From NCBI GenBank assembly GCA_001949185.1, contig BDGG01000010.1:1621773-1685772 (forward strand): DNA of 64,000 nucleotides, in the 5' to 3' direction. Source of the DNA: Ramazzottius varieornatus (Eukaryota; Animalia; Tardigrada). Below, piece after piece: positions 50,650 to 58,522 of this stretch. How positions within the stretch are numbered: the first letter of the stretch is position 1; each line of letters begins with the position of its first letter. The notes beneath the pieces were generated by a model. It was given only the letters and a program-made list of their open reading frames with translations. It was not told the DNA's origin and made no database searches. The translations under genes were made by a program, and so were the position numbers.

Positions 50650-53600
50650 TAAGGTGAAGCATATCCTGGTGTACTGCTTCTCCCTTTCAAAGATAGTATA
50701 TCCGTGTGAATGAACGCCTGAAAGAATATTACTTGCTAGAGCGTCACTTCCTACAGCAAAAATAGCGGCTATCGCAGCGGTTGTGGGGAAAAATTCCAGG
50801 GGAAGGATCCATGCTTAGCCCATAGTTATCATACTCTTGTGCCTGAAGAGCTTCTAGAACTAAAACACTAGTAAAGATGAAGAAGAACCGGGAAGAAGAA
50901 GACGACGAACTTATGGAAGACACAGTTGAACAGTGTTATCACAGACGTGTGGTTCTTCCGGCAGCCAATCTCGCGGTAACAACTATTTCACCGTACCGGC
51001 CACGGTGTACCCGCAGCATGGGCTGCGGTGTCCGGCACTGCTACTGCGCTTGTGGTTTGAGCTGTTTCTACACCGCAAAAGCCAGTGGGCGACAATATAA
51101 TAGTCGCGAAACAGTCCCTCTGGGTGACACGCCTCTCCAGTAAGCAAACAACCATTACCGGGGCGAGTAAAAATAAATGGATGGACTTAGTCTGTCGGTT
51201 AGCCTTGCGCTGCTGAATTGATTGAGTGCAGGGATGTGCACACGAATTTTCCGACGAAGTGCTTTTTTGTCACCCTTGCCAAGGGCCAGAGGTGGGCGGA
51301 TAGGTTTTCACTCCAAGAATAAAAACCATGTGTCTTTACATTCGTAGAATTATATTAGTAGAATTTATAGAAATCTATTGCAGAATGCCACGGATGGGTG
51401 AAGAGCTATTAGGCGTGGAAGAAACAGCTGGAAGCTACAAGAAAGCACACATCATGAACGGACACAGCAAGGGAATTGATACCGTAGATCTTGCTAGACC
51501 AAAAACCTCAAAGAACATTTAACCAGTCAGGCAAACATTGCACGTAAATAATAAGCCAAGCGGCGAAAATGAATATTCGCACTGGAAAAAGGACGCTCCG
51601 TACGCTTTCAGCTAGCCGCAAAACGAAGTGAAATGGCCCTAATCGAAGTCAAGCTCTTCCACATCGACGTATCCATATTCATCCAGTGAGACTTCTTCGG
51701 GGTCCTCCATCTCAGCCAACTTGATGCGATCATTGGGTTCAGTATCACACACGGTTAGCCCAGCGTGTCATTGACTACCTGATTATGTACTCATGGCGCA
51801 AATCTGTTTAACTGATTGACAGCTGACCGTTGATTGGCCGATCTGCCGCATCCTCACTACCCGGGACGGATTCACGCGTACGACTGTGCGGAGGATCGAA
51901 CATACTGAGGTTCAAGAATCCTGTCAGTTGATCTTCCCCCGTAGCGGGATGATCGAAAGCTGATCTTAACTTTCTAAAACGGCCAAGTTGACCCGCCTCG
52001 CGAACTAAGAACTATGGCCGTAAAAGAATCCATAAGAAATGTTGGATGGGTTGGCCAGGAGGCTAGATGTAACACCCATCGGTAGATAAAACAGAGCTTA
52101 GATTCTGTGAGCTTCGAGCAATGCAAGAGTTTCGGTGAGTTCTCACATAGTGTTGTTGGTGATGGCGGCTCAGCAAATTTACAAACGAGGCTTCCAGTGT
52201 ATGTAGTCAGTTAAAGGCTGGCGCGACATTACTTTATGATTTCTTAGTCTACTAGTGATGTGGGCATAAGGGTATCCCGACCTAATATAATTTTGATTTA
52301 ATAAAGCCACTGGCAGAGCTCGAAGCCAGGGAACTTTCCTCCCTACATACTTTTATCGTTTAACTAAATCTTCTTCACATCCAGCAAAAGATAGATCGAA
52401 ATTCGACGAACTCGACACACAGAGCGTTCGGAAGCGCAAGAAAGGGCCTTGAAAAGCAGACAGCATCGCCTTCAGCAATGAGCGTTGCGAGTATGCAGGT
52501 GGATCGCCAGACTCGTTTACCTGCACTATCCAATCAAACGAAGTTGACAATCAATGTATCGCCCTGAACGCTGATCAATATACGGTGATGTGCAGGTGCG
52601 TGACGCGTAATGATCCAACCCAACAGCGCACTGCGCAGAGTCGCACGCTTTTGCTAGACGCAAATCAAGTCTTATTTTAATCAACCAAAGACGAAATCGC
52701 ATATTCATAATCTTAGTATGGAGCGCCTTTCGAGTTGATTTTAATACAATATATTCAGCTCTGGATTCCATCTAATTTAACACTAATAGATATCCTGCCT
52801 CCTTCGAGGCATCTAATAAATGTTATTATAATATATTATATGCCAAAGGCATCTAATAAGTTCTAATTTAATATAATATTCATACCTGCCAACATCACTA
52901 AAGTCTACTCTGCTACCGCGGTTTTGTTACCGCCGATGCAGTGAGGCTATCACGTAATGCCCGCAGAGCTTACTAATGAACCTTGCGTGCGACTTGATAA
53001 CCCCATGTTATCCTATGTCATCCCATGTCAGAGCACTTCAGGTGGTCTAACATGGGAATTCTGGGCACGAGCTGTCGTTGTGGAGCTGGTTTTGTTCGTA
53101 AGTTTTTGTTTGAACCCCTCTGCTGAACTTTGCCCATTGAAGGGCAAAGTACAATACTAGTGGAGATAAGCTTGTGAATCGAATGTGACTTAAGAGAAGC
53201 CAAAGTAGGTCACAAATAAAGGAGATAAGGCTACAGCATTGCATTCTGAGTCACAGGGAGTAATTCAGTGGTTGGGGACTTGGGATACGCGCTGCCATCA
53301 TCCCAGTTCCCGTTTACTTCCGTTTTACCCTCCCTCGGCGGCAACAGCACGGGTCGACTAGGGCCGGAAATGGTGGAAAAACGACCACCCTAAATGGCTC
53401 TGACATACAAGAGGTGGGCATTTCCATTCCGAAAGAACAGGGTGGGAACGGCAGGATGGAAAAGCTGGGATAGGGTGGGATTACTGGTTTTCCGTGACAT
53501 CAAACCCGCAAACCACAAGTTCTAAAAGTTCCTGGTGTCTCTTTCAAGGGTTGCAAGTTAACCACCTCATTTGTACACAAGAGAGTAGCATTCCCTCCCA

Positions 53601-54608: not shown

Positions 54609-56344
54609 GATTGAAAGCGCGAGAACTAAATTAATGATGTACTATAACTGAGATCCTTTTTGATGGACACTGCCCGCATGCGCAGGCATGCTACAGTTCC
54701 AGTCTATTACAGTGGCGCGCAGAACCTATCAATCTGATGTTATGTATTGCGTACAAGACTCGAAAAATGCTCGAAGCATTTTTAGCGGTCATCATTTTAT
54801 GGAGTGTGAGATTGAGGCCTCAAACTCACTTCCTTTTATCTCGTACGTGCGGCCACTATTAGGCAACGCTTAAAAATGCACTGGAAACAGTAAATCTCAT
54901 TTCAATTTTCACTGCTCCGCTTACGCAAGGACAGTCGCAGCATTTCGATATTCTTGTTTCTATTCAGAAGCAGATATCAGAAAAGGTTCACTGAAAGACG
55001 ACACGCGCCACTGCAGATAAGTGGCTCTACGTATCACCGCTTCGCGACGCTACACCCAAGTTTCCCGGTCTTGACCGAAAACCCTCGAATTGCATGAAAA
55101 CGCGCGAACCGTCAGACTAAATTCAAATTGATGACTGTCCAGAAGTGTGCTCGACCCTCACTTTCTTACGAAACTGAAACAAGCTGCTTGAATTAACTCC
55201 ATCTGTAGCGACGGCCATGGGGTCGACAAAATCACAAAATACATTTAACGTTCGCGACACGAATAAATTACAGGACTGCAGAAACAGTGCAACTCCGGTT
55301 TTAGTATCTACAACAGAAGATATACGATATTCCAAAAGGTATTCGAAACTCCAAAATCTATGGACGGTGGTCTTGAACTCCAGTTTTCAGTTAGACGAGA
55401 CGACAGCGCTACGGGTGGGCCCCATCATCTGCAAAGTTTTGCCGGTACCGCGACCTCCATTTGTTGATCGCATCAGAATTTCCGAATTTCCGACGTCACG
55501 TCTTCTAGTCCACAAGATCGACGTCAGCATAAAACTATCATACCTGGAACTCTGTGATCAATATTCCGGTATGATTGGTCCATAAAAGCACCGAACAAAT
55601 TCATCATCAACCTTCTCAAGGCGCAAACATTCCGAAAAAAGTTAGATTGAGCATTGCTTCAAATTGTCATGTTCGGGCGCGTGAGAATCGATAGGAGATG
55701 GTCAGGATAATTTTACCGGTCCTGCGTCCGGGTGTACTTCCTGTGTTATTAGCTTACAGAGCAGTACATTGTGTGCCTTCGAAAACGCGTTTGAACTGCG
55801 GATTGTACTCGTTGGCCAAATAATCCACTATACAACCACTAATGACTCAGCACAGGCTGACTATGTGAAGCATCGTTATCTGAATCGTTTTTGTCACGTG
55901 CACTTGAGAAAACCGCTTTGATGCCCTCCAGTGCGGCGACCCGTCCAGATTTGTTCGTGGAGAAGAAACCATGCAACACTTGAGTTACCTAACAAAGTTC
56001 TACAGTGATACACCGCTCATCGTGAAAGGTTTGATTCCAAAAGGAGAGTCTTAATATTTCTACAGTCGCGCTCTAGATATATCGAATTATGGCACAAGAA
56101 TTATTTCACTCAATGGCTTGCTAGCCTACCTTTGGGCAACAGTACCCGTTAGGGTGCCGCCCCGCGAGTCTCGTGTTAAACCTTTACCCGTGTGCAGCTT
56201 TTCGTCTGCGTGCTAGCTGCGGAGTTTCGGCTAGACTGAATACCATACATTGACAAGTGTGCCTTACTTATCGCCCTTGCACAGTATACACAGCGGGAAT
56301 CTGTTCAAACATATCATTGCGCAAACTGAATCAAGCAGCGTCTG

Positions 56345-56466
56345 GTACTGTATGCTCTCCCGAAATTCACGTACGTCACTGACTCTCAAATCATTGGGGT
56401 CTTACCGTGGCGAAAATACACTCTGAATGGAGTGACGTACGTGAATTTCGGGAGAGTATACAGTAC
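56345..56466. mobile_element. ~120-bp hairpin MITE
   Basis: 35-bp inverted arms TACTGTAT(G/A)CTCTCCCGAAATTCACGTACGTCACT with one mismatch. Confidence 0.8.
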
Positions 56467-56757
56467 AGTCAACATGTGCTCGTGCTGCCCTGTCAAACAA
56501 TTGACCTTGCATTCTGGGAGTACAGTGTAGGCAAATAAGCTACTCTAAAAGTGGGTTGGACTATCGACAGTGAAGACACCGAACCAAAAACTATTCTAAA
56601 CGAGACAGCTTTCCTTTATGGTTGATTACAGCAGTTGATCAAACATACACACACACTCCACAGCTGACTGCCCAAATGACAGGCAACATGTTACGTAACA
56701 CCCGGCAAAACGTTCAGGCTGGTCTGAAAGTTCTCTTCTTGGACATCTATCCATCTG

Positions 56758-56850
56758 TCCCAACTCGTCGTACTCGGCTTTGGAAATCCATATCCGTTGG
56801 AAAGTTGACAGCGAAGCCAGGATAGAACCACCGATCCAAGGACTGTACAA
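56758..56850 (-). pseudogene. Actin C-terminal coding fragment inside the Tc1 element
   Basis: [31 protein letters not shown] versus animal actin [31 protein letters not shown]: 25/31 identical by hand count. Confidence 0.92.
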
Positions 56851-56851
56851 G

Positions 56852-58068
56852 ATGGCACCAGGAAAGCCTGTCGATCCAGACCTTGTTGGTCTTGTTTTCA
56901 GGTGTTTTGCACAAAACAACAGGAATTACAGCGTAGTTGGACGGCTCGTGGGAAAGAGCTACAAGTGGGTACAGAATATCATCGTTAATTACGATGAATC
57001 AACGAAAAGCGCAAAGTTGCCAAGCCAAAAGGAAGACCTCGTGCGACGACCACTGAGCAGGACGCCGATTTGTTGGGATTCGTCTAGGCGAATCGAGAGC
57101 TTAGCGGCGCCAAGATTGCTGTGGAAGTTGGACTATGTCGCAAGACACTATTAAACCGTCTGCGAGATTTTAAGGCCCGCCGATCCAAAGCTGTCCTGGA
57201 TGAGGTCACCCAGGAGCATAAGGACAATCGCGTCTTCTGGTGCCTTATTCAGCGGGAGCTTCTTCTGGAGAACCCTACAATGTTCCACGAAGTCATTTTC
57301 AGCGGTGAAGTCCGTTTCAATTTGCATGGTGGCAAGATTGAGGTGATCATATTTATTATTTATCGTATTCACTATATTTATTATATTTAATTTATTTATT
57401 TTATTCATTGTATTTATTTTATTTATTTTTCTATTCTATTTTTTCTATTTATTTTAGTGCTGGTATTTGAAAGGGGAGAATCGTCAGAATAAGGACTTGC
57501 AAGTTCTGTTGCCAGTCGCATCAAGGGCAGGATATTGCTGTGGGGCGCTATCACCGCGACCGGACCTGTAGCGTTGATCAGGGTAGATGGTCGGATTAAT
57601 TCTGACGTATATGAGGATACGTTGTTTGAGCGTCTGCTGCCTTTCTTGGATAAGCATGGACGGGATCTGACATTTCAGCAAGACAAATATCCAATCCACA
57701 CTTCCAGAAAGATGGGGCAATTCTTTTGGAGGAAAGAAATAGAAGTAAGTCTTGCATTTCTAATTTCACATCGTTTACTTATCAAATTTTGAACGCACTT
57801 TCGAATATATAAGTCTACAGTCTGTCTATCTTAGGTTTTGGCATGGCCTTCAAGATCTCCGGATCTTAATGTCATCGAAAATGTCTGGAGAAAAATGAAT
57901 ATGTATATTTGTGACCGAAGACCGAAAAATCTGGTGGAGCTGGACACTCTTATCCAAGAAGCGTGGAAAGCGATCGTGACTCCCGAGTACTGCAGCAACC
58001 TGGTGAATTCGATGTTCGATAGAACGACTGATTATATTAATAATTCCGGTGCTCGCACTTCTTACTAA
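56852..58068 (+). pseudogene. Tc1 transposase with two GT-AG introns (57343-57457, 57745-57834); inactivated
   Basis: MAPGKPV HTH region, GRPR, IFSGE (D->G), LWGAI, FQQD-x34-E through WPSRSPDLNVIENVW. Frameshifts near 57020 and 57495; TAG at 57085-57087. Confidence 0.92.
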
Positions 58069-58522
58069 CCCCATGATTTCAGTTTTACAGGTCGACTTTC
58101 TTGTTTTACCTCATATAGTTTCGTGTTTCATGTTTGTGACGTTCTGGTTTTATGATCAAATTTCATCCAACTGAATTGCCGCTGAATGTTATTTATTGGC
58201 CCATAGTACTTTGATGTACGCCCATAACTGCCGCCCCCTTTTAGAGTAGCTTATTTTCCTACGCTGTACCTGAGCTTGATCCGGACAGGGGACAGCCAGC
58301 AGTCGCAATCCCGCGCTTCGACAAAAATAGACCAAAACCACGTTCTCCATGCTAGGGGTGAAAACCCGCTCGCCCGTCCCCTGGCAAGGGTGACAAAAAA
58401 TCCCTTCGTCCGAAAATTCCTGTGCACACCACTGATTGAGTGCATGGCCGCATCCGCATGCTAAGGTTTAACAGTAGCAGCACATCATTGCCAATTTGCC
58501 AGTTTCATTGCTTAGCATACAT

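What the first reader, a model, noticed from the sequence alone, without database searches (positions are those of the whole stretch)
56523..56854. Tc1 transposon carries an antisense actin fragment fused directly to its transposase start codon
Seen: inside the TIRs, 56758-56850 encodes on the minus strand the actin C-terminal block [31 protein letters not shown] (25/31 identical to animal actin). Similarity ends 1 nt before the transposase ATG (56852), where actin's PPER would be. Sequence toward the left TIR may be the rest of the donor's 3' end/UTR. Known: host-fragment capture is typical of Pack-MULE, CACTA and Helitron elements and much less so of transposase-coding Tc1 elements. Inference: the transposase 5' leader would be antisense to an actin-family mRNA. 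It could be a neutral capture, a recruited promoter/leader, a source of anti-actin small RNAs, or a shield that makes silencing the element costly to the host.
Basis: partly seen in the sequence, partly recalled or inferred. Interest (0 to 1): 0.85.

Follow-up and report, generated by a model that had tools for sequence, protein, structure and literature searches.

The report
Tardigrade Tc1 transposon carrying actin scrap
A small family of Tc1-type jumping genes in the tardigrade Ramazzottius varieornatus picked up a 75-base piece of the host's actin gene, backwards, just ahead of its transposase gene and has carried it to at least five places since; this is a rare multicopy example of a known kind of accident, and nothing found suggests the piece does anything.

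Summary
Window 56764-56838 (minus strand) is 69/75 identical to the last exon of the host's own actin gene. The antisense ORF hits Pfam Actin at E=6.5e-12. The piece sits 13 nt upstream of the transposase ATG (56852) of a TA-flanked Tc1-like element (56523-58266). The genome is Ramazzottius varieornatus.

It is not an assembly artefact or a one-off. All five full-length copies carry the same piece at the same junction, each at a different locus; four have TA on both sides and the fifth is cut short at its 3' end. Two old deletion derivatives keep part of it. A sister family (at least 9 loci) and a third family lack it.

The sequence between the piece and the left TIR is the element's own leader plus 51 nt of unknown filler, not actin 3'UTR. 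The actin frame decays freely among copies: 10 nonsynonymous changes (one a stop) against 1 synonymous. The piece diverges as fast as exons 2 and 3.

One copy also holds a recent 1.58-kb capture of the host Pex19 gene, with repair-type junctions.

Best reading: filler DNA captured during break repair and then carried along, a multicopy "Pack-TIR" as described in animals by Tan et al. 2021. The scan also noted this on another copy (s1-808358).

The parts
56521..56522 (.). TA target-site duplication, left
   Evidence: TA directly flanks both ends here. The four full-ended other copies also have TA at both ends, in different flanking DNA.
56523..56555 (+). Left terminal inverted repeat (begins CAGTG)
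   Evidence: the repeat finder pair I2: 36 nt, 92% complementary, arms 56520-56555 and 58234-58269.
56556..56712 (+). The element's own 5' leader, homologous to the leader of a sister Tc1 family
   Evidence: Alignment A1 columns 1-199 align with four sister-family copies. It is the most conserved long part among the five copies, at 0.066 changes per column.
56713..56763 (.). Filler of unknown origin, the non-actin part of the subfamily-specific block
   Evidence: Absent from the sister family. No match elsewhere in the genome apart from family copies. No similarity to the actin 3' ends.
56764..56838 (-). Actin-derived fragment: codons about W340 to E364 of the host actin last exon, antisense to the transposase
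   Evidence: 69/75 identical to the C2 actin gene. PF00022 E=6.5e-12. Present in all 5 full copies.
56839..56851 (+). 13-nt spacer before the start codon; its last 4 nt (CAAG) are shared with the sister family
   Evidence: Alignment A1 rejoins the sister family at CAAGATGG. Only GTAC at 56845-56848 matches actin.
56852..57342 (+). Transposase exon 1, broken in this copy
   Evidence: Three-frame translation shows a frameshift near 57005-57015, an in-frame TAG at 57086-57088 and the first catalytic D replaced by G. The exon end agrees with annotated protein RvY_12000 of the C7 copy.
57343..57457 (+). Intron 1 (GT..AG), AT-rich microsatellite.
   Evidence: The splice is confirmed by the annotated model P0001, which joins ..GGKIE to CWYLK...
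57458..57745 (+). Transposase exon 2, with a frameshift near 57500 in this copy; holds the second catalytic D (QQD)
57746..57834 (+). Intron 2 (GTAAGT..AG)
   Evidence: Read from the sequence. The frames on either side continue the transposase.
57835..58068 (+). Transposase exon 3 with the catalytic E; stop codon at 58066-58068
   Evidence: PF13358 DDE_3 E=3.6e-6, model positions 112-145. 34 residues lie between the second D and the E across the exon 2/3 join, read.
58234..58266 (-). Right terminal inverted repeat
58267..58268 (.). TA target-site duplication, right

Best explanation
This is a multicopy host-fragment capture (transduplication, or 'Pack-TIR') in a transposase-coding Tc1-like DNA transposon of Ramazzottius varieornatus.

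Inferred origin: in an ancestor of this subfamily, a double-strand break or an interrupted gap repair in the 5' leader was patched by copying from other templates. About 80 nt of the original leader just upstream of the start codon was replaced by about 135 nt of filler (56713-56847). This filler is 51 nt of unknown origin plus 75-85 nt copied in reverse from the last exon of a host cytoplasmic actin gene.

Shown: the patched element stayed mobile. The block was carried through at least five transpositions, and into a deletion derivative that also moved.

Inferred: the block is a passenger. It is transcribed, if at all, as part of the transposase 5' leader, and it has no selected role of its own.
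For: Origin from host actin:
- 69/75 nt identity to the C2 actin gene, which equals the distance between the actin paralogues on C2 and C11.
- It shares the host's ..SKAEYDE.. variant.
- PF00022 E=6.5e-12.

Family-wide and mobile:
- The leader is 94-97% identical in copies on C1, C5, C7 and C17.
- The junction is the same in all of them.
- All five sit at different loci. Four have TA on both sides in different flanking DNA; the C17 copy is truncated at its 3' end.
- Two relics on C7 and C10 share one internal deletion (about el 265 joined to about el 1640) and keep about 30 nt of the piece at 79-82% identity.

Subfamily-specific replacement:
- The sister family (at least 9 loci) shares the leader up to 56712 and the CAAGATG, but has a different stretch of about 80 nt in between.
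- A third family has a 177-nt leader without actin.
- The genome-wide Actin scan hits only the five copies among Tc1 loci.

No constraint:
- Among copies, the actin frame shows 10 nonsynonymous changes, including a stop in C17, against 1 synonymous.
- The piece changes at 0.120 per column, like exons 2 and 3 (0.11-0.12). The shared leader (0.066) and the unknown filler (0.039) are slower.

The mechanism is seen at work in the same family:
- The C5 copy has 1,579 nt of the Pex19 last exon and downstream DNA, 98.4% identical to a single-copy locus about 740 kb away on the same contig.
- Its left junction has 2-nt microhomology. Its right junction has a 9-nt deletion and a short templated duplication.

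Precedent: gap-filling and template-switch capture by hAT and TcMariner elements in animals (PMC8277862).
Against: - Transcription start, strand and small RNAs were not measured, so a role in expression is not excluded.
- The piece has been kept next to the start codon in every full-length copy, including the one whose exons are all open.
- The capture is too old for its junctions to show microhomology, so the repair route is inferred from the Pex19 case and from the literature.
- With only five copies the divergence test has little power: 9 changes in 75 columns.
Confidence: 0.72

Rival explanations
1. Co-opted leader or promoter: the filler block, with or without the actin part, now supplies the transcription start, the 5'UTR or the start-codon context of the transposase. 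It is kept because the subfamily needs it.
For: - It replaced the original start-proximal leader, yet the subfamily went on to transpose at least 5 times.
- The 51-nt non-actin filler and the upstream leader are 2-3 times less diverged than the rest of the element.
- Two upstream ATGs at 56676 and 56689 would burden any transcript that starts further upstream.
Against: - The actin part itself is not conserved: 0.120 changes per column, and the 13 nt before the ATG change at 0.31.
- The sister and third families do without it.
- No expression data are available.
Confidence: 0.13
2. Antisense or small-RNA module: the transposase leader pairs with abundant actin mRNA. This would yield siRNAs, damp transposase translation, or make silencing of the element costly for the host (the 'shield', or epigenetic-conflict, idea).
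For: - The predicted duplex between the leader and the C2 actin mRNA is -146.7 kcal/mol, against -43.6 +/- 5.3 for shuffled leaders.
- Perfect matches reach 20 nt in the window copy and 25 nt in the C1 and C17 copies.
- The genome has at least 10 Piwi-domain (Argonaute-family) loci.
- The concept is documented for captured fragments in maize (bioRxiv 10.1101/777037) and raised for animal Pack-TIRs (PMC8277862).
Against: - Complementarity is eroding freely: the C7 copy, the only one with open exons, is down to 65 matches and a longest perfect run of 14 nt.
- There are only 5 copies, most of them broken.
- No RdRP domain was found, though that search had no positive control.
- No small-RNA or expression data are available.
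Confidence: 0.07
3. The minus-strand ORF (56629-56919, 97 codons) is a real small protein with an actin-like C-terminal motif.
For: The frame is open for 94-99 codons in four of the five copies.
Against: - It covers only Pfam Actin positions 372-403 of 410.
- It has no ATG start.
- It shows a 10:1 nonsynonymous to synonymous ratio and a stop in C17.
- It overlaps the transposase start on the other strand.
Confidence: 0.01
4. Assembly chimera or chance similarity.
For: None found.
Against: - The same junction occurs in five copies on five contigs.
- BLAST E=2e-23 to the host actin gene, and Pfam E=6.5e-12.
Confidence: 0.01

Closest known systems
Pack-TIRs of animals (Tan et al. 2021, Nat Commun, PMC8277862)
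   Same: - A non-TE host sequence lies between the TIRs of a cut-and-paste element, and the parental copy can be identified.
- The captured piece is small (their median is 224 bp) and exonic.
- TcMariner is the second commonest carrier in their set (115 of 370).
- They infer a gap-filling or template-switching origin.
- They note antisense orientation to the parent gene as possible.
   Different: - This case is multicopy (5 full copies plus 2 relics). Only 4 multicopy cases were found across their 100 genomes.
- The carrier still has the full transposase gene, and the piece sits in its 5' leader next to the ATG.
- The host is a tardigrade, a group the paper's text does not mention.
- The capture is older: 8% diverged from the donor, and the relics are about 20% diverged.
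Turmoil-1 of C. elegans (Sela et al. 2008, PMC2572040)
   Same: - A transposase-coding animal DNA transposon holds fragments of host protein-coding genes (rsp-2, cpg-3).
- The fragments are not under purifying selection.
- Several copies exist.
   Different: - Turmoil-1 is a Harbinger element, and its fragments lie in the long ITRs.
- This element is Tc1-like, with the fragment in the unique 5' leader and present once per element.
Pack-MULEs, Pack-CACTA and Helitron captures of plants
   Same: Host exon fragments are amplified by a DNA transposon. The ideas of antisense small RNAs and silencing conflict come from these systems (bioRxiv 10.1101/777037).
   Different: - Those carriers are usually non-autonomous, and they capture often and in bulk.
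- This is one short fragment in a small family.
- No small-RNA evidence is available here.
Abortive gap repair products of Tc1/mariner (MITE birth by microhomology, PMC3814204)
   Same: The two relics with one shared internal deletion (about el 265 joined to about el 1640, at a short AAAT-type overlap) look like such products.
   Different: That process deletes sequence. The actin block is an insertion made during the same class of repair.

Membership tests
Tc1/mariner superfamily, Tc1-like (DD34E) | TA target-site duplication | tested here: met
   TA lies at both ends of the window copy and of the C1, C5 and C7 copies, in different flanking DNA. The C17 copy has TA at its left end only, because its 3' end is truncated.
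Tc1/mariner superfamily, Tc1-like (DD34E) | Terminal inverted repeats beginning CAGTG | tested here: met
   36-nt arms, 92% complementary.
Tc1/mariner superfamily, Tc1-like (DD34E) | DDE_3 transposase domain (PF13358) | tested here: inconclusive
   Two complementary parts each fall just under the 28.6-bit cut-off. RvY_12000 scores 26 bits, E=9e-6, model positions 2-107. Window exon 3 scores 27.3 bits, E=3.6e-6, model positions 112-145. The joined protein was not searched, following the rule to search exon by exon. The source databases name these proteins Tc1-like transposase.
Tc1/mariner superfamily, Tc1-like (DD34E) | 34 residues between the second D and the E | tested here: met
   Counted by eye across the exon 2/3 join from the translations: QQD .. 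34 residues .. E of NVIEN.
Pack-TIR / transduplication | Non-TE sequence inside the TIRs, with an identifiable parental copy elsewhere that has no TE around it | tested here: met
   Actin genes on C2, C11 and C15 match at 88-92% over 75 nt. A sister TE family lacks the block.
Pack-TIR / transduplication | Multicopy through transposition (distinct insertion sites and target-site duplications) | tested here: met
   Five loci on five contigs in different flanking DNA; both TA ends are seen in four copies.
Pack-TIR / transduplication | Microhomology at the breakpoints | tested here: inconclusive
   The actin capture is too old, and the sister family too diverged (about 70%), to read its junctions. 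The recent Pex19 capture in copy C5 shows 2 nt of microhomology.
Small-RNA-producing captured fragment (as in Pack-MULEs) | Transcription of the fragment and small RNAs that map to the fragment and the parent gene | not testable with these tools
Actin family (as a working protein) | Full actin fold under purifying selection | tested here: not met
   Only model positions 372-403 of 410 are present. There are 10 nonsynonymous changes against 1 synonymous, and a stop in one copy.

The most novel reading that the evidence does not exclude
The reverse actin tract in the transposase 5' leader is a working regulatory device. By pairing with the very abundant actin mRNA 13 nt upstream of the AUG, it would either throttle transposase translation or feed Argonaute pathways. 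This would tie silencing of the element to an essential host gene.
Probability: 0.06. Interest if true: 0.7.

Novelty: new member of a known kind. Interest (0 to 1): 0.3.

Why it matters
This is a clean, datable example of a transposase-coding Tc1 element that captured a host exon fragment and then kept transposing. In the survey of 100 animal genomes only 4 multicopy captures were seen (PMC8277862).

The fresh Pex19 capture in a sister copy is also useful. Together the two cases show both ends of the process in one small family and one compact 56-Mb genome: a single-copy capture with readable repair junctions, and an old capture that has been amplified. That makes it a handy case for studying how break repair feeds host DNA into mobile elements in tardigrades.

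It does not by itself show a new mechanism or a function.

Tried and rejected
After that, no search tool received letters of 57390-57425. Local alignment scripts on whole copies did include the intron, but no statistic was taken from it.
- The look-up of sequencing runs: 13 runs guessed to be RNA hold a constant 15-18% of the element's sampled words.
- Actin 3'UTR hypothesis: local alignment of the leader against 400+ nt of the 3' ends of four actin-type loci found nothing beyond the 75 nt. Rejected.
- Donor assignment: C2 is nearest (69-70/75), but C15 and C11 each share single positions with the TE piece. 75 nt cannot decide between them.
- Other species: the protein search with exon 1 found only R. 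varieornatus proteins. The tool sees only proteins of 90-287 residues, so full-length Tc1 transposases of other species were out of range. No conclusion can be drawn.
- The joined three-exon transposase was not searched, following the rule to search exon by exon.
- No paper was found on Tc1 elements of R. varieornatus.
- The RdRP search was blank but had no positive control.

Full report
**What is there**

The window is contig C10:1621773-1685772 of a 55.8-Mb, 200-contig assembly. Protein hits named RvY_... identify it as Ramazzottius varieornatus.

At 56523-58266 lies a Tc1-like element:
- TA on both sides.
- 36-nt inverted repeat arms beginning CAGTG.
- A three-exon transposase gene, 56852-57342, 57458-57745 and 57835-58068. 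The first splice agrees with the annotated protein RvY_12000 of another copy.
- DDE_3 matches in two parts, at 26 and 27.3 bits, each just under the 28.6-bit cut-off.
- 34 residues between the second D and the E.

The window copy is dead. It has two frameshifts, an in-frame TAG, and G in place of the first catalytic D.

- The minus-strand ORF 56629-56919 matches Pfam Actin at E=6.5e-12, 45 bits, positions 372-403 of 410.
- At DNA level, 56764-56838 is 69/75 identical to the last exon of the actin gene on contig C2, and 66/75 to those on C15 and C11.
- That is as close as the C2 and C11 paralogues are to each other.
- The piece also carries the host's ..SKAEYDE.. variant, so it was taken from this lineage's own actin.

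Solid nucleotide similarity stops at 56838, 13 nt before the ATG at 56852. The Y-S resemblance nearer the ATG rests on a GTAC run and on a Ser codon of a different class. On the other side, similarity stops exactly after ..EYDE. The remaining actin codons, the stop codon and the 3'UTR are not there.

**It is a family feature, not a one-off or a chimera**

- A whole-genome search finds four more full-length copies, on C1, C5, C7 and C17.
- Their leaders are 94-97% identical to the window's and have the same junctions.
- Each lies in different flanking DNA. Four have TA at both ends; C17 is truncated at its 3' end.
- The genome-wide Actin scan lights up exactly these five Tc1 loci.
- Two older relics, C7:1178659-1179031 and C10:177565-177790, are 79-82% identical. 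They share one internal deletion that joins the middle of the actin piece to the right end.

So the capture predates them, and the deleted form also moved.

State of the copies:
- The window copy (C10) is broken as described above.
- C1 has a stop codon.
- C5 has a 1.58-kb insertion.
- C17 has deletions and a truncated 3' end.
- C7 has all three exons open, and an expanded microsatellite in intron 1.

**What the piece replaced**

A sister family has at least 9 loci, a coding sequence 70-80% identical, and 81-nt TIRs. It aligns with this family from the TIR through 56712 and again from CAAGATG. Between those points it has a different segment of about 80 nt. A third, more distant family has a 177-nt leader without actin.

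So 56713-56847 is a subfamily-specific replacement: 51 nt of unknown origin, with no other match in the genome, plus the reversed actin piece. That sequence is the element's own leader.

**Is it kept for a reason?**

- In the actin frame the copies differ by 10 nonsynonymous changes, one of them a stop in C17, against 1 synonymous.
- Per alignment column, the actin tract changed 0.120 times.
- Exons 2 and 3 changed 0.11-0.12 times, exon 1 0.165 and intron 2 0.19.
- The shared leader (0.066) and the unknown filler (0.039) are slower.

The tract is therefore not protected as coding sequence, and it is no more conserved than exons 2 and 3. If anything near it is constrained, it is the sequence upstream of it. 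Power is low, because there are only five copies.

**How it got there**

The same family shows the process directly. Copy C5 carries 1,579 nt that are 98.4% identical to a single-copy locus about 740 kb away on the same contig. That locus is the last exon of Pex19 and the DNA downstream of it. The insert is joined with 2-nt microhomology on one side, and with a 9-nt deletion plus a short templated duplication on the other. The annotation even reads it as a chimeric protein with a Pex19 domain.

These are the marks of filler synthesis during break or gap repair. This is the route Tan et al. 2021 infer for animal Pack-TIRs: 370 cases in 100 genomes, 115 of them in TcMariner elements, with a median microhomology of 2 bp (PMC8277862). 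I infer the same route for the older actin capture, followed by ordinary transposition of the patched element.

**What could not be tested**

Expression, transcript strand and small RNAs could not be tested.

The antisense idea remains physically possible:
- The predicted duplex with actin mRNA is -146.7 kcal/mol, against -43.6 for shuffled leaders.
- Perfect runs reach 20-25 nt.
- The genome has at least 10 Piwi-domain loci.

But complementarity is eroding. In the only copy with open exons, the longest perfect run is 14 nt.

**Comparison and verdict**

This is a member of a known kind. Host-fragment capture by cut-and-paste elements in animals is documented by Turmoil-1 (PMC2572040) and by Pack-TIRs (PMC8277862).

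It is unusual in three ways. It is multicopy, where only 4 such cases were found in 100 genomes. It sits in a transposase-coding Tc1 element. And it lies right next to the start codon.

The 'shield' idea is the epigenetic-conflict hypothesis already formulated for maize (bioRxiv 10.1101/777037).

Most likely it is a neutral passenger (about 0.7). A co-opted leader (about 0.13) or a small-RNA role (about 0.07) stay open until reads are mapped. Another first-stage note (s1-808358) recorded the same structure on another copy, which agrees with the copy survey here.

Noticed in passing
G000:C5:1253228-1254801 (locus L007:1-1500; donor L040:1493-3070 = C5:~1994937-1996514): The C5 copy of this Tc1 family holds a recent 1.58-kb capture of the host Pex19 last exon plus downstream DNA, 98.4% identical to the donor. 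It is inserted in transposase exon 1, in frame. The left junction has 2-nt microhomology. The right junction has a 9-nt deletion and a short templated duplication. It is annotated as the chimeric protein RvY_10269, which has a Pex19 Pfam domain.
   Followed up: yes
window 56345-56466: A 122-nt palindromic MITE (36-nt arms, 97% complementary) lies 57 nt upstream of the Tc1. At least 35 copies at 91-99% identity are spread across the genome, so it looks recently active.
   Followed up: partly
window 51229-51285 and 58378-58434: 57-nt inverted repeats, 88% complementary, bracket about 7.2 kb that includes the MITE and this Tc1 copy. The Tc1 therefore sits in a nest of elements. This is the subject of another first-stage note (s1-790219).
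   Followed up: partly
window 55903-56115: Another dispersed repeat of about 210 nt, with at least 5 further loci at 78-87% identity.
   Followed up: no
G000:C7:1178659-1179031 and G000:C10:177565-177790 (L034, L035): Two degenerate relics of a MITE-like deletion derivative of this family share one breakpoint inside the actin piece (about el 265 joined to about el 1640, at a short AAAT-type overlap). The non-autonomous form therefore transposed at least once.
   Followed up: partly
G000:C7:372338-374505 (L005/L006): The C7 copy, annotated RvY_12000, has all three transposase exons open. The AT-rich microsatellite in its intron 1 has expanded by several hundred bases, as tandem units of about 63 nt. 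The matching stretch of the window, 57390-57425, is the part the reads tool would not lay.
   Followed up: partly
G000:C15:275217-277446 (L032): The actin-type gene on C15 reads ..ERKNSAWIGGSV.. and ..EYDKSGSS.., and it changes frame just before that block. It may be a decaying actin paralogue, or it may have an odd intron there.
   Followed up: no
whole genome G000: At least 10 loci have Piwi domains (Argonaute family). No RdRP (PF05183) match was found, but that search had no positive control.
   Followed up: no
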